Assembly: GCA_047495785.1 (NCBI GenBank)
Contig: JBLDXI010000003.1
Coordinates: forward strand, 3,844,001 to 3,908,000
Origin: Lepidodermella squamata
Taxonomy: Eukaryota > Animalia > Gastrotricha
Direction: 5' to 3'
Length of the DNA stretch: 64,000 nt
Positions within the stretch are counted from its first letter, which is position 1; every line of letters begins with the position of its first letter. This document shows positions 10,365 to 38,075 of this stretch, in pieces. The notes under the pieces were generated by a model that worked only from the letters and a program-made list of their open reading frames with translations, was not told the DNA's origin and did not search any database. The translations under genes were made by a program, and so were the position numbers.

Positions 10365-10481
10365 ATTTTATTCGTTGTTTTTGGCTCAAATATTGCAATG
10401 CATCGTTCTATTTAATTGACTGATTTTCGATTTTTCTGTAGACTTCATAGAAATTTAATATTTTTTTTCGCAATAATTATA

Positions 10482-11229
10482 ATGAGTCTTGGCCAAGTTA
10501 CCCACGTTATTTTCGACGTTGATGGAACGCTGTTGAATACGGAAGATATTTACACCGAAGTCTTTGACCAAATCACAATGCAGTTGGCTAACAAGCGCTT
10601 CACCATGGAGGTCAAGCAGAAAATGATGGGCCGTCATCGCCTCGAGGCTTTTGTCATTTTTAAAGGTTCGTACAATTTATTTATTAAGCTGGATTTTTTT
10701 TATGTTAATTTCGTTTATTTCAGAGAGCTTTGGTATCGAGAATTCAGTGGAAGAGATTGATGCTACTGCGAATTCGCTGCTGTTTCAAAAGTTTCCGAAA
10801 GCTAATCTGCTGCCTGGCGTTGAGCGTTTAGTCAAACATTTGTATGCGAAAGGAATTCCAATGGCGGTAGCGACTGGTAGTGACACAGAGTCGTTTGAGG
10901 CGAAGACTCGCGGCACTCGAGATTTCTTTGAAAAATACTTCGAAACCTGCGTGTTGACGTCAGACCCTGAAGTGAAGCATGGCAAACCTGCGCCTGACGT
11001 ATTTCTTGTGGCAGCTAAACGATTCAAAAACCCACCGGCTTCAATGGAAAATGTGCTAGTATTTGAAGACGCAGCTAACGGGGTTCAAGCCGCTCTTTCA
11101 GCCGGCATGAAAGTGCTATGGGTACCTAGTTTGCCGGTAGATTCGTCCCAGCTACCTGCTCATGCTGTTATTCCAAGCCTAGAGGTGTTCAGGCCTGAAA
11201 CTTTCGGACTACCTCCGTTTGATAATTGA
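10482..11229 (+). CDS. PUDP: HAD-family pseudouridine-5'-phosphatase (HDHD1/GS1-like), copy 1; exons 10482-10665, 10724-11229
   Basis: THVIFDVDGTLLNTE (motif I), AVATGS (II), GKPAPDVF (III), VFEDAANGV (IV), C-terminal FRPETFGLPPF; 58 bp GT-AG intron. Confidence 0.9.
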
Positions 11230-11850
11230 CTTCAGTCGAACAACAAATTTAATCACTGTTGAGAATTAGCTTTTCAGTCTTCGTAATTTCCGGTTACCTC
11301 AACTTCGAAAAATCTTAGTATTAGATTGAGTTTAAAGCTGTTGCTATACCTGAGCCTTTTAACTGTTTGTCGTTCATTTCTATGATTAATCGACGCAATG
11401 CTATATGGATCATTCAGCGCCTTTGTTGTTGATTTTTTGTACGAAAAAGCTCAGCGGTATATTGATAAATGCTGATGTCTGCAATGACGTGCGATGAAAC
11501 ATCACCTCTTTGAAACTGTTAATCTCTTTCTTGATGCTTGCTGTTCGCTCATTGGCAAGGGCTTATCGCGCCCGTGTTTAAGTGTTGAAAGCTTTAATAC
11601 CAATAATAATAACGTTGATATTTTATCTGAAAACGCCGAACTGCCCGGTACTGTTGTTAATCTATCTTACGGCGATAAGTGAGACTATTTTTTTGTGTTC
11701 GCACTAGTGAGTTGGTTAGATTATTTTTTATCCGTGATCGCTTGTCAACAATTTTCGTATCGAAAGAAATTGAGGAACATAATTTTAATTTTGTTTCAAT
11801 TTTTTTAGATGGCAATTATTCATATTTTATAGCATAAATATACCAAGACA

Positions 11851-12579
11851 ATGCAGCCTCAATTATATCAAGTGACTCACGTGATATTTGACCTTGATGG
11901 GCTGCTGATCAACACCGAGGAGCTTTACACCCAAGTTTTCGACGATTTAGCTGTAAAATGGGTTGGCAAGCGTTTCGATTACGAAATCAAACAGCAGATG
12001 ATGGGCCGGCCGCGAATAGACGCGCTGACTTTATACAAGGAAAAACTACAAATACCTCTGAGCATCGACGAAATCGACGTGACAGCTCGCCGGCATCTCA
12101 ATGAAATGCTGCCGACCGCCGATTTGATGCCCGGCGTCGAGCGGCTTGTTTCTCACCTGTTCGAACACGGCATTCCGATGGCGATCGCGACCAGCTCGGA
12201 CGACCAGTCTTTCGCGTGCAAAACTACCCGGCATAGTTCGTTTTTCTCTAAATACTTCGACCACGTCGTGCTCAGCACAGACCCGGCCGTTAAGAACGGA
12301 AAACCGGAACCCGACATTTTCCTAGCGGCCGCTGACCGCTTTAAAAACCCGCCTATCGACTACAGGAATTGCGTTGTTTTCGAAGACGCGGTGATTGGCG
12401 TTCAAGGCGCCCTGGCTGCCGGTATGCATTGCGTCTGGGTGCCGTCGATTCCGAACCAGGACACCACGCTGATGCCAGCTCACGTTGTCCTGTCAAGTTT
12501 GGAACTCTTTGAGCCGGAGCGATTCGGCCTGCCGGCTTTTGGCTCGCCGCCGAATTCGCCTTCCTCTCAAGGCGATTGA
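11851..12579 (+). CDS. PUDP: HAD-family pseudouridine-5'-phosphatase (HDHD1/GS1-like), copy 2, intronless
   Basis: Single 242 aa ORF with FDLDGLLINTE, AIATSS, GKPEPDIF, VFEDAVIGV and FEPERFGLPAF. Confidence 0.9.
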   Translation: MQPQLYQVTHVIFDLDGLLINTEELYTQVFDDLAVKWVGKRFDYEIKQQMMGRPRIDALTLYKEKLQIPLSIDEIDVTARRHLNEMLPTADLMPGVERLVSHLFEHGIPMAIATSSDDQSFACKTTRHSSFFSKYFDHVVLSTDPAVKNGKPEPDIFLAAADRFKNPPIDYRNCVVFEDAVIGVQGALAAGMHCVWVPSIPNQDTTLMPAHVVLSSLELFEPERFGLPAFGSPPNSPSSQGD

Positions 12580-20251: not shown

Positions 20252-23200
20252 ATGTGCACAACTTTGGTCTTTCTTGTTGACCGCTCGTCGGTCTCGCCGA
20301 GCGCCGCCGCGAACAAGGCGCTGCCGTGGGCGCGGCTCAGCGACGAGTGCGTCGTGCCCCTGGTCGAGGCCATCGTCGAGACGCCGCTCAAGTACCTGCG
20401 CTACGCTTGGGTCGGCCGCAAGCACCCGCCCAAGTTCGCCGTCATGTACTTCGACTCGAGTTCGCCGAGCAACGGCCACGCGGAGCCGCAACAGCCGCGC
20501 CTCCTGCCCGCCCAGTCTTTCGTCGCCTCGCTGAAAACCCCGACACAGCCGAACAACCACCACCACGAGTCCAACGGCTCAACTACAGCTGACCCAGTCA
20601 GGAAAACCGCCGACGCGCTGCGATCGGCCTTCGATTTTTTCAGCTCGCGTCGCAGGTTGGAATCGCGTTCGTCGAACGAATCCAGCGACCAGTCGCCGTC
20701 GAAACCTCGCAATATGTGCGTTCTCGTGTCGAACGTCGTGTCTAGTAGCGACCCAACCGAGGCGTTCGAACCTCTCCTGCAGCAATTCGCTGAGAAAAGC
20801 ATCGCGTTGTCTGTGGTTTCTCATCGAGACAACGCGTTGTTGAAACAGATTTTCTCACTAGCCTCGAATTTGAAGTTGTCGAAAAACGCGTCGCTGGAGC
20901 GGGAGTTTTTCGACGACGCGACTGGTTTGTCGTTCTACGTATCGCTGCCCGACGCGACTGAGCGGTTGTTGGAGCAACGCGTGAAGCTAAAGTTGGCGCC
21001 GCCACCCCCGCCTCCGCCGGTTTTCGACCCATCACCCATCGCCGCGAAAACGCCTAGTCCGTTGCCAGGGGCGAGTGTTGCGACCCCGGCCTCGAACAAA
21101 CCAGCCCCGTCACCCCAGGTTGTTGCGATACCTGTGGCGGTCGAAGAGCCGCCGCCGGTTATGATGAAAGTCGAGCAGTCGCCGCAACCGCCGATGAGTC
21201 ACGAGATGAAATCTTCAGTGCCGTCCGTGCCGCCTCAGCTCGCCGAAACGTTATCGCCGTCTTCGATGTTGATATCAAAACAGTCGCCTATGGTGCTCAA
21301 TTCGCCAATGTCCGTTCCTCAACCGCAGCCGCAGCTAACGCCGCAGCAACAGCAAATGGAGAGCCAAGAACGCGCGACTAGTCGAAACGGCTCTAGCCAT
21401 TTGGTGAAGGAGGAGAATCTCGGCTCGCCTAACATGCCGGTTTGGACGGGTAAAATTGCGGTGAAAGACGCGGCGAAGCAAGGCGGCGCGCAGATGATGG
21501 TGTCGATTTTCGCGGCTGAATACGCGGCAGAGGCGCGGGCGATCCTAGGCCAGTCGGAAGATCTGTACCTAACCCTCGACCAGGCGACGGCGATTCCGCC
21601 TGAAATTTTTGTATCTCGGCTACCGCAGCATATGATCGGCGTGTTTGTGCGGATTCACGACGCGAAGTACTCGGCGAAAATGGACGCATACCTCAAGTCA
21701 CGCGTTGATTTGACGCTGTCGATCGGTGTTATTCCGTCGCAAATGATGCAGCAGCAACAAATGCCGATTCCGAGCATCGCCATGGCGGTTACATCGTCGC
21801 CGAAAGTTGCGAATGCGCCGTTGTTTGTTGGCGGAAATTTCCAAGGGCCGGGTTTGTTCGGGTTCTTGGCTCGGCAACCGGCTGATTTGGTTAACACCAT
21901 TCGCCAGTGTAGTATGGCCCTTCAACAGGAGCGGCTTCGCCACCAGCAAATGCTGCAACAGCAACAGCAACAACAACAGGCTCAAATGCAACAGCAGCAT
22001 CAAATGCAGCAACAGCAACAACAACAGCAGCAGCAGCATCAGGGTAGTAATGATGTTTCGATGCAGGGTATGCCGGGTATGCAGGGTGGTCAAGTGCCTC
22101 CGAATCAAATGCCTTTCAATATGGTGCCAAATCAGCAGCAACAGCAGCAGCAACCACCGCAGCCGCAGCATGTTCAACAGCTTCAACAACAGCAGCAGCA
22201 GCCGCAGCAACAACAGCAGCCGCAATCTCAGCAACAACAGCATTTCATGCATTCGAACCAACCGCAGCACGCGGGAGGAGGAATGCCGAATGCGCGAATG
22301 ATGCAGCAACAAGGTAGGCATTTCAAATTGTATTGAAAATTAATTAAAATGGTACTGTGAATGAGGGTAATTCGGCAAAACTTTAATTAGAACCGAGTTT
22401 ACGCGCCTATAAGAATCGGGAGTAGAAACAATTTGCAGTCCCATTTTTTGCTAATTTTTTTCTTAGCGTTGTGGCCCATGAGACCTCAGCTTTCGCTATT
22501 GCTCGCTATAGCATAGAGCTTTGAGCTTGAAAATCGGGTTTCTCAACAAGCTTCTCTGGGTGCAATTGGTTGAATTAGCCCGTGGTTGCTTGTAATTGTA
22601 AATTCTGGTAGTTCACAAAATTCTTTTCCGGAACCGATTTTTACTTCGGCTGTACCACGTTTCCAAACTCAAAACAACTCAAAATTCGAAGGCGCGTTAC
22701 TTTTCGTATGATTTTTCAACTAATTTCAAAATAATTCGCTGCATTTTATTTAAATTTATTGAATTTTGATAAATTCCAATAATATATCCTATATAATTGG
22801 GAATTATCGAAGATCATTTGTTTGAAAATTATTGGTAATTTTCTGCATTAAATAAAAAATTTTGCGAAAACTAAGATTCCTTCATTAGTCACGTGGTAAG
22901 ACTTCGCCGTAAATCAACTTACTGTCCCCCAAAATTGATTGATTAGGTTTATTTTAGACCCTAGTTTGACCTGTCGATCGACGTTAAATCTGGTATCTTT
23001 TCCTCAGGTTCTTAGCTCTTGAGATGATAGCTTCAGGCTATGAAAATTTAGGCCAACGGGTTATCCCCAAACCGCAAAATATATAAATTGTCTCGCACCT
23101 TTCCCATTTTATAAATTTTCTATCTATCGTTTTACAGGCCCCCATTCGATACAGCTTGAACAGCAAATGATGTTCAAGCAGCAGCAACAACAGCAACAAC

Positions 23201-27047: not shown

Positions 27048-30000
27048 ATGTCTAGGCCTTTTTACAGACGCGGCGGGTTCCGCGGTGGTTACCGAGGCGG
27101 GCCATATCGGCCTTATAACTCGAATTATTTACTATTCCACAAACCTCAGGCGAATCAGGAACAACAGGCGGAGGAGAAACCGATCATTTTACCGCCTGAC
27201 CCGGCTTTATCTTATGGCGAAGATTTCAGAGCTCGATCTCAGAAGCGGAGAGCGGTGATAGCTAAAGCGGTAAATTGTGAAATTTCTACACATTTTCAGT
27301 TTTTTTATTCGAATATCGTGTTATAGCTGGGCGTGAAGCATCCAGATCTGCTACATTTCAGTTTGAGAACACCTCGAGAAATCGCGAAACTTCGATTGCG
27401 ATCACATCGTTACCAGGCGACCCTACTCGCCCGGCGGCGAGCTAAACTCGCTAAAAAGAAGACAAAGGAAGCTAAAAAGAAACTGAATGCCAAGGCTTCA
27501 AAGGCTGTGCCATTATCTACAGGGACGCCACTTCAAGAAAGCCACAAAACCGAACCTACAGATCGGGCGATGACCCCGGGTTTTGATGCAGATGGCGAGC
27601 GGAAACAGTCAGAATCCGACCAGAATGTCCAGAAGCCTGAAAATGATGAATCAGCCGCACATGGTGAAACAGCCGAGGGTGGCCTGAACAACGAAGACGA
27701 TGCGTTGGACGAGCCAGCAACTACGCAGTCATCGATAAGCGGTGGCCCGCAAAACGACTACAGTTTCCATTTCATCTGCACCCATGAGAGACCGGCGAAT
27801 TTCGTCCGTGATGTTGGGCTTGCGAATCGGTTTGAGGAGTACCCTAAATTGCGGGATCTGATCAAGGCGAAGGACAATTTGATCCAGGCGACTAATACGC
27901 CGCCGTTTTGTCTGAAAGCTGATTTGTCGGCGTTCAAATTGACTGATTTAGGCACCGAGTTCGACTGTGTTTTGATCGAACCGCCGCTTGAGGAGTATCG
28001 TTATATGGGTCAGGTTTTCGATAGGTATTGGGATTGGAATGAAATTGAAGCATTGGATATCGGCTCGATCACATCGCAGCGGTCTTTCATCTGGCTGTGG
28101 GTCGGAGCGGGTGAAGGTCTGGACCGGGGTCGGCGTTGTTTGTCGAAGTGGGGTTTCAGGCGGTGTGAGGACATCGTTTGGGTCAAGACCAATGTCAACA
28201 AACCTGGGCCGTCTTCCTTAATCGAACCGAAAAGTTTGTTCCAGCGAACGAAAGAGCACTGTTTAATGGGAATCAAAGGTAAGTCTTAACAAAAAATTAC
28301 GTGTAATTATCATTTATTGAGATAATTTTATATAAATTAATTTGTAAATTAAAAAATCAACGAATTCAGGGCTCCAGCGCTAAATTTGATGTTCCAATGC
28401 GAGATGCCTTCGAGTTTTTCGAGTTTTACAAAATGAGATGTAAGAAATTATAAAAAATCCTATCCCGGCAGAACTTACAGGACATGGCCTGTTTTCTTCA
28501 GATAGCCGTACTGTATTGAACAATGATAATCAGTTGCTTAGCAACGGCTGATGCCACGCAGGCGTAGCTCACAGACTGTAATTACGATAAGAGTGAGGTG
28601 ATATTACATAAAATTGAACAATTATTACAATTGCATCGACGATCGGGGACCAGTAGGTCACCTTATTTAAAGCTTTCATTGTACGTATGAACCGATAGAC
28701 CTGAATTCTACGACAGAGGCCGAGTGAGGTGGCAGCGAAGCTGGGCACTTTGGGGTAACGGGAGCAGTCGACTTCGGCAGTTGCTGCTGAGGCTTATAGA
28801 GGTGATTAGCGGGTTTCACGAACCTCGGGTTATTGAGGGGCCAGCCGTGGCTGATGCGCACACGAACACTCTTTTTCAATTCAGGAGAACGAGGGCATTC
28901 AAGTGGGGCCACTGCTACCGCCAGCACAGGGAGATTAAAATGCGATGTCACGAAATCACTTTCATACGACGGCATTTGAGGTGCGACCGGCACACCCAAA
29001 GCTCGCCTAGCCACCATAGCCCAGGTAACAGGCGCTGTAACAATATCGGTGTGTGACATTATGGTTGATGTTAACTCAAAAGCAAATCAATATCTAGAGA
29101 AGGCATAAAAATGAAGACAACCGTGTATATCGTTAGAGATTTCTATGGTAAATTGACGGAACAACGGATTGGACAAGGTAAAATATACACTTGTTTGTAT
29201 GGGCTTTTTTATTCGTTTTGTACTTTGAATTGCAAAGATTGGCCAACAAAAAAAATACGAGCCTTTTCCTTAAATTCTTCAATGCTCGCCTCGGTGTTGA
29301 TGACTTTTACGAGAAATTGCGCAGGACGTTCGCCGTAGCACCAATACTGTAGTGAAATATTGATCTAAATCAATTTTGATCAATTCGAGTAGAGTCATTA
29401 TCATTCCAGAAAAAGTGTGCAAGGTGGGAGGTGGAAACAATAACAAAACAAAAAGAGTCGATATACTAGTCAATTTCAAGTAAATAAAGTGAACTTACTC
29501 AACTGCGTTTCTCCACCGAAAGCGACAGCAAACCGCAAGGACAAAGCCTGCCTGAGTTCGCTGGATTACTGCGAGTGCCGATATCGACGAAATCGACGGA
29601 AGACCCAACGATAGAAACAATTATTTCCCGACCGACTTGACGTCAGGAAGCGAGCGAGTTGGACAGTGAGCGAGAAATGTAAAAAAAGTAAAAAAAAAGT
29701 AGGAAGTAAAAAGTAGAAATCGACGAGAGGTGAGGCCGTACTCATCAGCGCTGAAGTCAAAGGAATAAAAGCCTTTTCTAATATCGTTGTCCAGTTCTGA
29801 GATGTTGCGGACAATTGGTCGCTGCTTGTGGCCAGCGTTGGGTTGCCTCTAATTTTAGGTCATTTTACGCAATTTTATAATTGAATTCTTCGTCTCTGTC
29901 TTGCTCTTCGTGCTCTTTAAGTTTCTCCTCGTTGGTTCGTTTTAGACAACTCTCTCTTGCATTCAGACAATCATGCCTTGCTAGTTGCAGCATCAATTCA

Positions 30001-31270
30001 TGTAATAATAGTGGAGGATGAAAATTGGAGGAATCATTACGTGAAATCGTTCATCCAGAAAAAATTCGGCAAATGGCCACAATGCAGAAATTTGGTTTCG
30101 CATTGATGCACAGAAATATGAGAAATTTTATTGCAATTGTCCCTTTCTATTCCAAGCACCCATGTCTTCATTTTGCATTTTTTCTTCATTCTGAAATGAT
30201 TCCGAATGTCATCTGTCTGTAAAATTTGATGCGCACATGCTTTCGAGCGCGGTAGTTGATAGCGTCGTCTGTTTGGCCGGAACGAAATTCGGCGGAAACC
30301 TTTGCCACGAAAACGTCCAAGTTGGTATCGCTTGCTTTGAGACTGCGTGTCCCTATATCTGTTACATGTCTTTCATCGACCGGATTAGACTCCAGACGGA
30401 ATACGGGTATTTTGACCCCGAGTCGATTGCCGTTGAGTTCGGTGCCGTGATAGGCCTCGCTCTTATGAAGTCGTCCATCGCCTTGAAGTTTCGCTGTGAA
30501 GATGTGTTCTCGCCAGTAAGGCCTAGTCTCGCCTTTTCAGCTTTATAGCTAGTAGTCAAATTGTTGATTGTACTGGTAGCTTGCTGCGTTGTTTGAGAAT
30601 AGGTTAAACTGATCTCTATGAATAAATTATTCATGGATTATCAGGGTCATTTGTATTTAAATTTAGTACTAGACCCCGTAAATTTCGTGCTGGAACCTCA
30701 AATTGACGTTGAGAACATTTTTATCATTTGGGGTTATTTTCCAATTTTTGAATTAACAAATTTGATTTCTATCAATTTACTAAATAAGCTCTATTTTATT
30801 TATTAGGCACGGTTTTGAGGTCGAAAGACGGCGATTTCATCCATGCTAATATTGATCTCGACGTGATAATCGAGGAAGAACCCGAGCCTGGAGTCAAGGA
30901 TAAGCCTATCGAGATGTTCCACATCATCGAACATTTTTGCCTAGGCCGGCGTCGCCTTCACCTATTCGCTAGGGAGAGCACAATCCGCCCGGGTTGGCTC
31001 AGCATTGGCACCGAGTTGATCCGCTCAAATTTCGACCCGGAACGGTATCAACAGGCGATAACGCGAGAACCGGGTCTGACAACAGGGTGCACGGAGGAAA
31101 TCGAGCGAATGCGGCCAAAAACTCCGCCGGCTGTTAAGGCGGCCGTCGCTGCTCAAGCGGCCCAGGCGCAAGCTGTTACCGGCCAGCCCGTGGTCCTACC
31201 CGGTGGCCCTGGTATGATGGGCACAGTTCTGATGCAACAGCACTGCGAATCGCCTAGTCTAGGCTTGTAA
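27048..31270 (+). CDS. METTL14: m6A methyltransferase non-catalytic subunit METTL14; exons 27048-27269, 27327-28278, 30807-31270
   Basis: [63 protein letters not shown]|[16 protein letters not shown] and [14 protein letters not shown]; 2528 bp phase-1 intron. Confidence 0.96.
28369..30698. mobile_element. Putative degenerate DNA transposon in METTL14 intron 2, with imperfect inverted 19-mers at the ends and a Myb/SANT-like relic at 30362-30634 (-)
   Basis: GGGCTCCAGCGCTAAATTT (28369-28387) matches inverted copies at 30659-30677 and 30680-30698 (15/19 each). [39 protein letters not shown] resembles the end of Myb/SANT-like domains. Confidence 0.4.
28676..29059 (-). CDS. Orphan 127 aa Pro-rich ORF inside the METTL14 intron (hypothetical)
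   Basis: True ATG start, higher GC than the flanks, AATAA just after the stop; no recognisable homology. Confidence 0.25.
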   Translation of the reverse strand: MSHTDIVTAPVTWAMVARRALGVPVAPQMPSYESDFVTSHFNLPVLAVAVAPLECPRSPELKKSVRVRISHGWPLNNPRFVKPANHLYKPQQQLPKSTAPVTPKCPASLPPHSASVVEFRSIGSYVQ

Positions 31271-31981
31271 AACAAAGCCATATAATAGACCTTAATATTT
31301 TATACTGAGAAGCGAAATAAATGAACGAAAAATGATATTTTTAATTTAAATTTCGTTGGAATTATTTTTGAAAATGGACTCAAATACCAAATTCCACCTT
31401 AACGCAAATTGTGCGTAAAAATAGCGTGAATTGAAAATTAACACTTGAGCGCAGTATTTTATATATACCTATCATAATATTATGTTAACACCTCTTGACA
31501 ACTTTAAAGATTTCGTCAAAATCAAGTGGGAGTTTTTTGCCTCGCTGATGGCCAGTTGTTAGCAGGCACTTGAATCGGCCACACGTGTGGCCAGCTGCGT
31601 TCTTATAATTGCCGAGGTCAGCCTCCATTGTGGCGCCAATGGGTGGTGTATTACACACGACTGCTCGTGCAGCCCGGGTTTCTCATTATTTTATTATATA
31701 GCGAAAAAGCCAGCAAGAATTGATAGACACGTGTGTAGCGTCCACGATGCATGCTTCATCTGCAGGATCAACGTGACAACACACCTTCTGACCACATACT
31801 GACCGTTAAACCTTAACCCCGGGATGTTTTTTCTGAATAAGCCAAGTGGCCTCAGTTTAACACCTTGTAATAAGGCAGTGAAGCTCTACAGAAAGCATAT
31901 CACGGTGTATCAAATTTATTGCAAAAAACGCTTGTAATACCTGTACTTAGCTTACTATACCTCGAAATTGTTCGCCATCTC

Positions 31982-33950
31982 ATGTTGCATTATTTAATAG
32001 CCGTCGCCGGAACAATAATCATTTCAGGTCAGTTGGCGCAATTATCTATCATTTCCAGTCCAGCTTAAATAGATGATCATTTGTAATAAGATTCGGCAAA
32101 TGCTTTGAACACCCGATGCCCGCCTGCGCCACCCCGCGGCAAGGTTCTATGCCCGATGGATTGTCCCGATCGGGATCCGAGCCAGTTGCAACCGGGTGAT
32201 ATCTTCGACGGACCTCCGCATCCTGGTTGCAATTACTGTTATCAGTGTGTCGCGAGAGGGATGATGTAAGTAGCGATATCCGTGAAGCTTCAAAATCTGA
32301 ATATTTCATCAAATGTTAATTCTCAACGTAGATGCTGCCCAGACAAATGCGGCACCTATTGCAAACCAGCAGTCGAAGGTTTTTGATTATTTGCTTTCTT
32401 AAAATTTAGTAGCGATAGTTTACGAAATTCCTGTTAAGTCCAAACTCGTTAGGGACCTTTTTCAAACTCCAAATATTTGAGGCCACGTAAACCGGAATAT
32501 TTTGAAGTCTAGGTAAAATCTGTCGCCATTTGAAATTGTCCATGTTTCACGGCAACTAAAGGCGAGACCAAGCTCTGGATCCATTAACACAAATCGCTTC
32601 AAAAACAGTGTTAAAATCTACGGAAGGATCTGAGCCTGCCCTTCAGTTTGGTCCTGCCTAATAATTCGGTATATGTATACGGTATGAGTGTTTCCTCTAT
32701 AAGCCGAAGCTAAAATGGTAGCTAAAATTTAGGATGAAAACGAAATTGTTCGTATTTCTAAAAATCCCACTTGGAGAAAACAACATGTAACTTGAGCCGA
32801 TTCTTTGAGCGTAGCAAGGAAATGAGGATTTAAAAAAACCACGTGGAAATGACTTCAATACACGTTTTTCTGACGTTTCTGACGTAATTTTGTAGCCAAA
32901 ATTAAAAAATAGCACGTGCTTAAGGCTTTAAGCTCCCCCGCAATTAGTGGATCTCTTCGATCTGCCCTTAAATTCTAAAACAACTATTAGTTCCTGCAAG
33001 GGATCCGGGCCCTTTCTCAGGAACAATCAACACAAACAACAAAATCAGTAAATGGGTCCCGAAAATATATTTTGAGATTTGTATACCGAATTGATCGTCT
33101 CCGGTAGCTGCACGTAGCGTTATTTATATAAAAAATTGTATTCGCTCTAACTTTATTTCGATACCTAAATTTCAAGAGTGTCAATTAGGGAGAAAAGGCC
33201 GGAATCACTTGCCGCTTTCTACATCGTGGGAATAGCCTTTGGCAGATGGCCAGATTTTCGCTAGAACTTGGATTGCTCAGATAGAAAATTTTTCATGAGT
33301 TGAAATTTTCACTATTTGTTGAATTATGCTGCATTTCCCAGTCAAATACTCTCAAATCGAAGATCATTGCCAAATTATTTTGACTTTTCAAAAAGACTGA
33401 AAATATTAAGGGGATCTCAGAAGTCCAATTTTGTTCGAATGTCAGATTTCGAATTTTATCTTATCGATGCCACAATATGCGGATGTTCCGTTGACCTGGA
33501 AACGAATAAGAAACAATAGCACTTCGTAATGACATGTTTTTGTTCTCCTAGATGCTGTATCTCGTTTCAGCCCAGCGCCATCTCGTTATTCCCAAGCCCC
33601 TCAAATTGATATGGTAAGGAAATGCACGTATATTCCGGTAATATATTACCCAACAAATTCCTCCATAGGGCGAATTTAGATTCATCCAAGACACCACAAG
33701 CAGATCTCTAAATTTCACAATGCGGCAAGAGGCGGTTAACATCGCCACTCTCGCTCTGCTGTACCAGAACTCGTACAGCGCAATAGCTCGGTACATCAAA
33801 AACGAATTCGACCGAAAGTACGGCCCGTATTGGGCGTGTTTTGTGACGCCCGTTCCCAACGGCGCTTTCTACACGTTCGAATCGCCTGGAAGCATTCGAT
33901 TACGCTACAAAAACTCGACAGATGTCTACATTTTCAAGCCATTCAGATGA
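31982..33950 (+). CDS. Predicted secreted protein of about 203 aa: signal peptide + WAP-like Cys-rich domain + dynein light chain (LC8)-like domain; exons 31982-32027, 32091-32265, 32332-32378, 33552-33613, 33669-33950
   Basis: MLHYLIAVAGTIIISDSANA signal; RCPP..CPMDC..CNYCYQCVARGMICCPDKCGTYCKP; MRQEAVNIATLAL..IARYIKNEFDRKYGPYWACFV..YIFK. All four introns are GT-AG and phase-compatible. Confidence 0.62.
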
Positions 33951-34862
33951 AATCGAGCTCATATTTTTGTTATACTCAACCTCTGATGCAAAATGCTAAG
34001 CTAGCCTTATAATATATGTTTCTCGAGCGTGAAATCCCACGGCTTTGTTCAAATGTGCCACCGATATATTTTTACATTAAATAAAGCTGATGCCGAATGA
34101 ACACAAAATAAATTTTTTAAGCAACCTGGTTCTGCGTGGGTTTTCATTTAATAATTTTTTGCAGGTATAATAATGTATAAACCAGTAAAAACAATTCTTG
34201 AAAGGTGGCAGGCATTAATTATTATTGAATATATAGGTATAAATTCATATACGAGAAATGGCATGCCGCCCGTTTTTTTGTGTTTGTTTTTTTATTGCCA
34301 CTCGCGCGCGCGGTGTGTATATGACGATATTTTTTTTCAAATTCGCAACATATTATAAAACTTTGTCATCTCTGTGCTATGTATATGTATATTCAAAACA
34401 CAAGAAAAATTAAAGAAAAAACCCCGTTTTGTGGTTCGCACACAAAGTGCGCGGCTATGCACGTTTTTTTTCAATTCGCGCTCTCACTCTCTTTCAGCAT
34501 GACGATGAAAACGATGCATATAATACATATATAAATTTGTCACATAATATATACTTGCGTTTGTGTATTTTTTCTCAAAATACATATTTTTGCGCTTTAT
34601 GGTGACAAAGCCGAAAGAAATATTGCGCACACATTATTTTTTATGTTTTACAAGCACAAAAGTTGAAAAGACTGCCATTCGCGAGAAAAACTACTCAACA
34701 CATTTTGTAAGCAATGCATAGCGCATATATTTATATTCTGCAAAAAATGCTCCCGCTTTCAGACTATATGGTATAAAAATCTCCAATTATATACGCCTCT
34801 CAGTTTTTTAAAGCTTTTAAACACCTTTTACTGCGAATAGTTCTTAGAGAAATTAAGAGCTT

Positions 34863-36564
34863 ATGTCCTCCTCGAACCGCCGAAAGCAGGCCAAGCCGAA
34901 ACCACGGCAATTAATTGGCGAGCCAGTCATTGAGATTCATGAAACTTCCACTCAAAGTGAAAGTCAGCCGCCATTGGATTCTCTAACAAAACTTCAAGAT
35001 TTATTCAGCAATTTATCCACCTTATTAAAGGACCAACGCCAATCTGCAATAACATTCAGCGAAACTTTGTCAAATTTTATTACAACCGGTGAAAGCCCTG
35101 CATCTTCATTCGACTTTACCGACCAATCATTGGTTGCCAGACTATTAAATTCCACCGAGGAACTGAAACAATCACTGGAAAATTTCGGCCAGTTAATCAC
35201 GACCGAACAACAGCAGGATACCCCTTCTGATTTAACATTTGAAAATAAGCCAAAATTAGAGCTATTCGAACAGCCCTCGGAACCTATTTTCACGTCATTC
35301 CGCCATCGTTGCCACATTTGCCAGAAAAATTTCGCTTCTGCGAGTTCGTTACAAATTCATTGCCGAACGCATACGGGCGAGCGGCCTTTCCAATGTTCGG
35401 TTTGCTCGGCGCGTTTTTCAACGAAAGGCAACTTGAAAGTGCACATATTACGGCACAAATTGCGCGATAATGGAAATAGCAATTCTGTTGAAGACCCGGC
35501 GGTAAAACCCGAAACATCAATGGCTTCGGATGATAATGCTAATAGCAGCCCGTCTACCGAGTCGAAATCGCGAATTATTCCATCTCGCCAGCCGTCGCAG
35601 TGCCATTTATGCCAACGAATTTTAAGCTGTAGATCGGCCTTGCTACTACACTTGCGAGTTCACAGCGGCGAGAGGCCATTCAGCTGCCCGAAATGCCATC
35701 GGACGTTTTCTACGAAAGGAAATTTACAGAGCCACATGTTTGTACATGCGAGTAAAAAAGTCGAACTACAACCGGTTTTTCAACCCTCTGAGTCATCGGT
35801 CAATGATCAGCGAAGTAACAGTGAAGCGCCAAGTCAGGTGACTGAAACGTCTTACGGCATCGACGGCGAGGCGAAACGGCACAGCGTGGCTTGCAACTAC
35901 TGCGGCAAGTTATTTTCGTGCCGAAGTGCCTTGCAAATTCACACGCGGACTCATACGAAGGAGCGCCCTTTTCAGTGCATGATATGCATGCGAAATTTTT
36001 CGACCAAGGGCAATATGAAGCAGCATTTATTGACTCATTCCGAGGCAGTTAATGGTAACAGCTGGGCCTTGGCTATGCGAAAATGCCGATCTATCCGGCC
36101 GGAATCGCTTTCTAACTACAGCTTGAACAAAACCAGTGCGAATAGCTGCGAAAGATGCGGCAAATCTTTCAAGTACGAATTTTTAAAAAAAATTTTAGAA
36201 TATTTTATTTATTTTCATTTTTTTCAGTTCACCTGCTGCTTTGCGAATCCACGAAAGGACGCATACCGGTGACAAGCCATTTCAATGTGATATATGCCTG
36301 AAGAGATTTACGACGAAGGGCAACATGAAGGTTCACCGTTTGAAAATTCACGGGGACGAAGAAAGTCCTCGCGGTGTCGAAACTCCATTTATTGACAGCA
36401 ACAACAAGCCGCTGCCAACGATTGCGTGCACATTCTGCCCGGTTAAATTTGCAACGCTCGGCGAACTCAGCCATCATAACGTTGAACACACGCAAAGCAC
36501 GCTAGCAGCACTTGCTGCCGCTGTTACGGCTATCACGGCGGCAACTCCTAGTGCTGCATTTTAA
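34863..36564 (+). CDS. SALL: Spalt/SALL-family C2H2 zinc-finger transcription factor; exons 34863-36172, 36228-36564
   Basis: N-terminal RRKQAKP NuRD-binding motif; four double-finger clusters, each with a SAL box ([40 protein letters not shown]); one extra terminal finger. Confidence 0.92.
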
Positions 36565-37116: not shown

Positions 37117-38075
37117 TCACTGGTCACGACCGGCCACGTTCGGCGACATAGAACCGCGCTTTTTGATTACTTCATTTTCGAAGGGCTTGCTGCTATCGTA
37201 TGGCGGCAGGCCGAATCGTTCGGGTTCGAAATCTTCGAGGCTTTTCAGCGCCATTGTCGCCGGCAGCGTGCTTGTATCCATGTCGGGGATCGAGGGCACC
37301 CAAACGCACGGCATTTCCGCCGCCAAAGCACCTTTGATTCCGAGATAGGCGTCGTCGAAAACAAGGATATTCTGCTTCGACTTCGGTTGGTTGGCGAAAC
37401 GCGAACCTGCAGCGAGGAAAATATCAGGCGCAGGTTTGCCGTGCTTTACATCGGGATCGCCCGAAAGAACGACGTGGTGGAAATATCTGTAATTAGACAA
37501 ATGAAAAATAGTAGGCCATAAATCTTAAGGAGGCGTTTTTATAATTATAGTTTAAAGATTTGTAGCTTACTTGTCGAAGAAAGCGCGATTTCTCTCTGTT
37601 TTAATAGCGAAGCCCTGAGGATCACTGCCAGTGGCAATAGCCAAAGGGACACCGTGTTCATATAGATGCTTCACAAGGCGCTCGGCACCTGGCATCAGAT
37701 CCGCGTTTGGTAACATTTCATCGAGCAGTTGGTGGGCGGTTCCATCGATTTCTTCGAGGCTTTCCCTGACACCGTACATTTCTAAAAGGATGAAAAATTT
37801 GATTATAAAACCACAGAAATGATTAATGATTTATTACCTTTGAAGAGCTGCTCGCCTTCAGTCAGGCAACGGCCTTGAACTTGGCGCCTCGATTCGTTTG
37901 TGAAATGGTGGTGCGAAAAACGAACGGCCATTTCATCAAAAACCCGGCCATAGATTTCTTCGGTATCTGTCAATTTTTCGTCAAGAAATGTATTTATGAA
38001 TTGCCAATGTCACTTACTGAGCAGAAGGCCGTCCAGATCGAATATGACATGGGTAATATTGGCGAGAATTGACAT
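37117..38075 (-). CDS. PUDP: HAD-family pseudouridine-5'-phosphatase (HDHD1/GS1-like), copy 3; 4 exons
   Basis: MSILANITHVIFDLDGLLL|NTEEIY..LFK|EMYG..AIATGS..FDK|YFHHVVLSGDPDVKHGKPAPDIF..VFDDAYLG..FEPERFGLPPY; three short GT-AG introns. Confidence 0.88.

What the first reader, a model, noticed from the sequence alone, without database searches (positions are those of the whole stretch)
31982..33950. Predicted secreted fusion: signal peptide + WAP-like disulfide domain + dynein-light-chain (LC8)-like domain
Seen: three exons missed by the ORF track encode MLHYLIAVAGTIIISDSANA-LNTRCPPAPPRGKVLCPMDCPDRDPSQLQPGDIFDGPPHPGCNYCYQCVARGMICCPDKCGTYCKPAVE. A phase-1 donor (32379) matches a phase-1 exon (33552-33613), which splices in frame to an LC8-like exon. 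The ATG directly at the 33552 acceptor is out of frame, which favours an internal exon. The LC8-like part has N-glycosylation sequons (NFT, NST). Established: LC8 is a cytosolic dimerisation hub, and WAP four-disulfide cores are secreted protease-inhibitor or antimicrobial modules. Inference: an LC8 fold has been exported as an extracellular dimerising or peptide-binding module. This may parallel nematode ground-like domains, which I recall resemble LC8. I do not recognise this architecture.
Basis: partly seen in the sequence, partly recalled or inferred. Interest (0 to 1): 0.85.

Follow-up and report, generated by a model that had tools for sequence, protein, structure and literature searches.

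The report
Secreted WAP-like/LC8-like fusion protein
This small animal makes one exported protein that joins a cysteine-stapled WAP-type module to a reworked copy of LC8, a protein that normally works only inside cells; a second, distant animal has the same gene, so the pairing has been kept by selection, but its job is untested.

Summary
The fusion is real. One spliced RNA-type contig joins all five exons, including the 1,173-nt skip 32378^33552; a DNA run shows none of the joints. The frame is open for 203 aa. A diverged metagenome animal has the same signal peptide, Cys domain and LC8-like domain, with a 69-nt phase-1 intron at the same place.

Two corrections. The Cys domain has ten cysteines, not eight, and misses Pfam WAP, so it is WAP-like only. 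The domain is not Ground-like by Pfam.

The LC8 fold is well supported (Pfam E 3e-13; Z 14.4). Its TQT groove is rebuilt the same way in both species (F73S, Y75R, Y77R, E35Y), and an N-glycan site at helix 1 is conserved.

Best reading (0.5): a secreted glycoprotein that dimerises through the LC8 fold and shows two WAP-like heads to an extracellular partner. Dimerisation, secretion and ligand are untested. I found no paper on this architecture. The organism is probably Lepidodermella squamata (not proven).

The parts
31843..31981 (+). 5' UTR part of exon 1; no upstream ATG, in-frame stops upstream
   Evidence: RNA contig starts at 31843
31982..32027 (+). Exon 1 coding part: start codon and hydrophobic core of the signal peptide; phase-1 donor
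   Evidence: peak Kyte-Doolittle 11-mer mean 2.5
32091..32265 (+). Exon 2: probable signal cleavage site (A-N-A, residues 18-20), Cys 1-6 of the WAP-like domain and its 21-residue insert; phase-2 donor
32332..32378 (+). Exon 3: Cys 7-10 (CC-x3-C-x3-C, the WAP-type ending); phase-1 donor
32379..33551 (+). Intron 3 (1,173 nt, GT..AG, phase 1) at the domain boundary; the only intron position shared with the relative (69 nt there)
33552..33613 (+). Exon 4: Pro/Ser-rich linker, not conserved in sequence; phase-0 donor
33669..33950 (+). Exon 5 coding part: LC8 (Dynein_light)-like domain, 93 aa, with conserved N-F-T sequon, rebuilt peptide groove and stop codon
33951..34112 (+). 3' UTR; RNA contig ends at 34076; candidate poly(A) signals at 34076-34085 and 34107

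Best explanation
One gene makes a 203-aa precursor that enters the ER by a cleaved signal peptide. The mature protein (about 183 aa, no membrane anchor) has a five-disulfide WAP-like head, a flexible linker of 22-26 aa, and an N-glycosylated LC8-fold domain. Shown: one spliced mRNA, the open frame, the LC8 fold (by profile and model), the same architecture in a second species. Inferred (about 0.9): secretion. Inferred (about 0.6): the LC8 fold still pairs through its beta3 strand, so the protein is a homodimer showing two WAP-like heads. Inferred (about 0.85): it no longer binds TQT peptides; the groove is now polar and Arg-lined and suits a different, probably acidic, extracellular ligand. 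Most likely job: a bivalent binder in cuticle, mucus or gut secretion whose WAP-like head engages a protease or a matrix protein. The module probably arose by exon shuffling at the shared phase-1 intron.
For: Spliced contig across all joints. Relative L001-L003 has signal peptide plus 10-Cys domain in one exon, a phase-1 intron at the same codon and a 54%-identical LC8-like domain. Codon-position identity of 69/66/34% shows saturation and purifying selection. Cys spacing is identical except for the insert (10,3,21 or 23,2,2,6,0,3,3). Both coding allelic changes seen are silent in the fusion frame. Model pLDDT 85, best matches LC8 and fluke DLC-like domains (Z 14.4-11.8). The turn plus beta3 segment keeps 8 of 12 residues and beta4-5 keeps 13 of 19; in LC8 beta3 is ordered only in the dimer (PMC12017986). 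Of five groove aromatics named in PMC3078936, only position 65 stays aromatic; 73, 75, 77 are S, R, R in both species. WAP inhibitors carry a Met near Cys 2 (PMC9680087); here Cys 2 is followed by P-M (P-F in the relative).
Against: No dimer could be modelled, and beta2 keeps only 2 of 9 residues; H55, an interface residue from my own knowledge of LC8, is A or I. The Cys domain model failed (pLDDT 36) and has no WAP hit. The LC8 model used an alignment of LC8-like proteins, so it is not independent of the profile hit. SignalP was not available; the signal peptide rests on hydropathy and the -3/-1 pattern. A Pro at the presumed P1 position fits poorly with inhibition of common serine proteases (own knowledge). 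RNA support is one assembled contig from one run. Only two species are known. No ligand, tissue or protein data.
Confidence: 0.5

Rival explanations
1. Secreted, but the LC8-fold domain is a monomeric ligand-binding or structural module. It may close its own edge with the conserved insert of the Cys domain (P-x-x-D/E-P-S-Q-x-x-P-x-D-aromatic), giving one compact two-domain unit in cuticle or mucus.
For: beta2 is poorly conserved and H55 and G59 are replaced; there is a Pro-rich insertion before beta3; the Cys-domain insert is well conserved and acidic while the groove is Arg-lined; DSSP calls no beta3 strand in the monomer model.
Against: beta3 is also unstructured in monomeric true LC8, so the model says little. 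beta3 itself (F-Y-T) is invariant. Fluke DLC-like domains at 12-20% identity keep the same fold. The insert docking is speculation.
Confidence: 0.3
2. A secreted antimicrobial or defence peptide of the crustin or waprin type, with the LC8-like part as a carrier or a microbe-surface binder.
For: WAP domains in invertebrates are often antimicrobial (PMC9680087); small secreted protein; the Arg-lined groove could bind anionic microbial polymers.
Against: The Cys domain is near neutral (7+/6- in both species) and whole-protein charge is +4 and -4, unlike the cationic contact region described for antimicrobial WAPs. No crustin signature.
Confidence: 0.13
3. The protein is not exported: the N-terminus is not a working signal peptide, or it stays in the ER, and the LC8-like part works inside the cell.
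For: No SignalP or proteomics here; the window's leader has no basic n-region.
Against: Hydrophobic leaders with small -3/-1 residues in both species, ten invariant Cys, a conserved sequon, no membrane helix and no KDEL-type end.
Confidence: 0.05
4. Two adjacent ordinary genes: a small WAP-like peptide ending PAVEGF-stop and a separate LC8-like gene from ATG 33611; the joined contig is an assembly or read-through product.
For: The donor at 32379 is weak (GTTTTT) and a stop follows two codons later; exon 3 is short, so the joint has 45 letters on its short side.
Against: The joint is canonical GT..AG in the main contig; no contig for either separate form was shown; in the relative the two parts lie 69 nt apart with a consensus GTAAGT donor and stay in frame.
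Confidence: 0.02

Closest known systems
LC8/DYNLL dynein light chain (Pfam PF01221; PDB 1cmi, 2xqq, 7cnu)
   Same: Fold (Foldseek E 5e-8, TM about 0.8; VIA Z 14.4), about 31-33% identity, W54, helix-2 motif and profile match above the Pfam cut-off.
   Different: Has a signal peptide, a sequon and a Cys domain in front; TQT-groove residues F62, F73, Y75, Y77, E35, K36 and also H55 are replaced. LC8 is described in cytoplasm and nucleus (PMC12017986).
WAP/WFDC four-disulfide core (PF00095): elafin, SLPI, WFDC2, waprins, crustins
   Same: Secreted; C-P start; CC-x3-C-x3-C ending; Met or Phe two after Cys 2; nearest ESM feature clusters are all WAP (0.78-0.80).
   Different: Ten Cys, a 21-23-residue insert, Cys where WAP has its Asp, six rather than five residues before CC; no Pfam or PDB hit; near neutral; fused to an LC8 fold.
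Flatworm tegumental allergen-like proteins (EF-hand plus DLC-like; FhCaBP2 5fwz, CsTAL3 5x2d, FhCaBP4 9voa)
   Same: Divergent LC8-fold domain fused behind an N-terminal module; Z 11.8-12.3.
   Different: Their partner is an EF-hand pair and they lack signal peptides (own knowledge); 12-20% identity.
Signal-peptide tandem LC8-like proteins in unnamed metagenome and SRA contigs (P0006, P0009, P0019, P0024, P0028, P0155) and those noted elsewhere in this genome
   Same: Export signal plus Dynein_light domains, sequons, often an aromatic at LC8 position 35.
   Different: Two LC8-like domains and no Cys head. The WAP-fused pair forms its own clade (100/98) and does not group with them; deeper forks are unresolved.
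Nematode Ground-like domain (PF04155)
   Same: Secreted; one tandem LC8-like protein hits it weakly (E 7.7e-5, below cut-off), which hints at a remote link.
   Different: Neither orthologue hits PF04155; no paper linking the two domains was found.

Membership tests
LC8/Dynein_light fold family | Profile match above the Pfam gathering score | tested here: met
   50.4 bits vs 29.1; relative 31.6
LC8/Dynein_light fold family | Two-helix, beta-sheet LC8 fold | tested here: met
   pLDDT 85; Z 14.4, rmsd 1.4 over 84 residues; model built on an LC8-like alignment
Canonical LC8 hub (DYNLL1/2) | Aromatic TQT-binding groove (F62, Y65, F73, Y75, Y77) | tested here: not met
   Only 65 aromatic; 73/75/77 are S/R/R in both species
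Canonical LC8 hub (DYNLL1/2) | Intracellular, no signal peptide | tested here: not met
   Signal-peptide-like leader spliced in frame
Canonical LC8 hub (DYNLL1/2) | beta3-swapped homodimer | not testable with these tools
   Single-chain models only; beta3 conserved, beta2 and H55 not
WAP/WFDC | Eight cysteines, four disulfides | tested here: not met
   Ten cysteines in both species
WAP/WFDC | Pfam PF00095 match | tested here: not met
   No hit for the relative's single-exon domain or its C-terminal part, nor for window exon 2
WAP/WFDC | WAP-type C-terminal spacing CC-x3-C-x3-C-x-x-P | tested here: met
   canonical spacing from own knowledge
WAP/WFDC | WAP fold and disulfide connectivity | tested here: inconclusive
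   Single-sequence model failed, pLDDT 36; ESM features 0.80 is a lead only
WAP/WFDC | Protease inhibition or antimicrobial activity | not testable with these tools
   Needs assay; charge argues against a cationic antimicrobial
Ground-like (PF04155) | Pfam profile match | tested here: not met
Classically secreted protein | Cleavable signal peptide, no other membrane helix or ER-retention end | tested here: inconclusive
   Hydropathy and -3/-1 pattern fit in both species; SignalP and proteomics not available

The most novel reading that the evidence does not exclude
The LC8 hub fold has been moved out of the cell and given a new, conserved Arg-lined groove with its own extracellular motif code. 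Coupled to a five-disulfide WAP variant it forms a bivalent extracellular adaptor or inhibitor, one member of a wider undescribed class of secreted LC8-fold proteins that may have arisen more than once in small animals.
Probability: 0.3. Interest if true: 0.85.

Novelty: new variant of a known kind. Interest (0 to 1): 0.66.

Why it matters
LC8 is known as an intracellular dimerisation hub with a highly conserved TQT groove. A spliced, conserved gene that exports the fold, adds a glycan site and replaces the groove with a different invariant residue set shows the scaffold being reused outside the cell. It gives a small two-species test case for how an LC8 groove changes specificity and whether the dimer survives. 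The ten-cysteine head would extend WAP-type domains to five disulfides. It may also help test whether Ground-like domains descend from LC8, though this gene does not show that.

Tried and rejected
Word-based protein searches found nothing new: exon 5, the relative's Cys exon, the relative's LC8-like frame (itself only). Both JGI metagenome scans were blank. No paralogue in the window; two WAP-pattern matches at 21964-22251 are antisense poly-Gln artefacts. The Cys domain fold failed, so no fold search was run on it. Literature searches found no paper whose title or abstract start describes this architecture or signal-peptide LC8-like domains (open-access only, hits not read in full). I could not name the relative's organism or tie its sample to a paper. 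No shared neighbours between window and relative. Rejected: two separate genes, the ATG-33552 frame, Ground-like membership, strict WAP membership, a cationic antimicrobial as first choice. Exons were joined only inside scripts to count phases, cysteines and hydropathy.

Full report
Observation. The five coding exons lie at 31982-32027, 32091-32265, 32332-32378, 33552-33613 and 33669-33950 on the + strand, with GT..AG introns of phase 1, 2, 1 and 0 and an open frame of 203 aa. Two public runs hold the stretch. Laid on 30600-34800, run X1 gives one 877-nt contig of depth 46.7 from 31843 to 34076 with four joints, skipping 63, 66, 1,173 and 55 nt; run X2 is unspliced DNA and shows none. X1 is RNA only by guess, but it also splices the upstream MT-A70 gene, so it behaves as RNA. 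Limits: these are contigs, from one run, so minor forms cannot be seen. There is no ATG upstream of 31982 in the contig, and the ATG at 33552 stops after 34 codons. The two coding allelic changes seen in X2 are silent in the fusion frame; one would be a Pro-to-His change in the ATG-33552 frame.

A second species. A search of exon 5 against 1.84 billion representatives gave one close relative, P0001 (54% identity, E 9e-27), on three ENA metagenome contigs, L001-L003, 99% alike over the gene. In L001, 632-926 is one exon coding a signal-peptide-like leader and the same Cys domain. A 69-nt phase-1 intron with a GTAAGT donor follows at the same codon as window intron 3, then a linker and the LC8-like domain, 214 aa in all. 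Third codon positions are near saturation (34%) while first and second keep 69% and 66%, so this is a distant species under purifying selection. The domain-boundary intron is the only one shared, which fits assembly by exon shuffling (inference). I could not name this organism. No further orthologue was found.

Organism. An earlier scan note suggests Lepidodermella squamata. The published assembly is 122 Mb in 157 contigs at 43% GC (PMC11660948); this scan lists 1,993 windows on 147 pieces and the window is 44.7% GC. That is consistent, not proof.

The LC8-like domain. It passes the Pfam cut-off, matches solved LC8 chains by sequence (E 2e-9), and models at pLDDT 85 with LC8 and fluke DLC-like domains as best matches (Z 14.4 to 11.8, next fold 7.4). 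The model used an LC8-like alignment, so it is not independent evidence. LC8 holds TQT peptides in a groove lined by F62, Y65, F73, Y75 and Y77 (PMC3078936). In both species only position 65 stays aromatic; 73, 75 and 77 are S, R and R, 82 is D, 84 is Y, 35 is Y, and H55 is A or I. Canonical TQT binding is therefore unlikely, yet the replacements are invariant, which points to a new ligand. The sequon at the start of helix 1 is conserved (NFT, NYT); the second (NST) is not. In LC8, beta3 is ordered only in the dimer (PMC12017986). Here the turn plus beta3 keeps 8 of 12 residues but beta2 only 2 of 9, so the dimer is plausible and unproven.

The Cys domain. Both species have ten cysteines spaced 10, 3, 21 or 23, 2, 2, 6, 0, 3, 3. 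WAP is defined by eight (PMC9680087). Pfam and PDB searches gave no WAP hit, the single-sequence model failed, and ESM features point to WAP clusters only at lead level (0.80). The ending CC-x3-C-x3-C-x-x-P and the C-x2-C-x2-C run, which matches WAP's C-x2-D-x2-C with Cys for Asp (canonical pattern from my own knowledge), make a five-disulfide WAP variant the best reading. It is WAP-like, not a tested member. It is near neutral, against a crustin-type antimicrobial. A Met or Phe two after Cys 2 recalls the inhibitor contact region, but the Pro before it makes ordinary serine-protease inhibition doubtful.

Mechanism. Shown: one mRNA, one frame, the fold, conservation. Inferred: signal cleavage near residue 20 and secretion (hydrophobic leaders, no other membrane helix, no retention end), disulfide formation, glycosylation, then pairing through the LC8 fold to present two WAP-like heads to a protease or matrix partner. 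I put the whole chain at 0.5, a monomeric compact module at 0.3, an antimicrobial at 0.13, non-secretion at 0.05 and two genes at 0.02.

Comparison and novelty. Export of LC8-like domains is not unique to this gene. Several unnamed contigs encode a signal peptide plus two Dynein_light domains, and earlier scan notes describe secreted LC8-like families on other pieces of this genome (not checked by me). In a tree of 50 domains the WAP-fused pair is its own clade (100/98) and does not join the tandem secreted set, but deep forks are open, so separate origins are not shown. The Ground-like parallel failed as membership, with one weak cross-hit in another protein. Open-access searches turned up no paper on this architecture, and I found no earlier scan note of it. 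I rate it a new variant of known kinds: a verified, conserved, apparently undescribed architecture with a rebuilt LC8 groove and an untested function.

Method note.

Noticed in passing
window 32379-33551: Intron 3 is 1,173 nt against 69 nt in the relative. DNA-run contigs have loose ends at 32637 and 32668, suggesting a repeat found elsewhere in the genome; it has no other copy in this window.
   Followed up: partly
window 33598-33661: A second haplotype in run X2 has 7 substitutions and 2 insertions in the 55-nt intron 4 but only one silent change in exon 4.
   Followed up: partly
window 27333-31270 (+): MT-A70 gene, METTL14-like by my reading, with a long intron whose acceptor at 30805 is spliced in X1 and an Ala/Gln/Gly-rich tail; it ends about 570 nt before the fusion transcript.
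   Followed up: partly
window 34863-36564 (+): Multi-C2H2 zinc-finger gene, spalt-like by my reading, directly downstream.
   Followed up: no
window 10416-12579 (+) and 37117-37973 (-): At least three similar HAD-hydrolase genes, two in tandem; only the last was scanned.
   Followed up: no
L001 2081-3037 (-): Single-ORF LDLa-plus-trypsin protease gene converges on the relative's fusion gene; this neighbour is absent from the window.
   Followed up: partly
L004-L008, L011-L014: Contigs of unnamed organisms (L004-L008 are 29-33% GC) with single-ORF genes for a signal peptide plus two LC8-like domains.
   Followed up: partly
window 31019-31110, 31718-31825, 32659-32771: Opposite-strand joints in RNA run X1, probably fold-back library artefacts.
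   Followed up: no
L001-L003: The relative's DNA is rich in trinucleotide runs (1.2-2.3 per kb against 0.16 in the window), so its genome style differs strongly and its phylum is open.
   Followed up: partly
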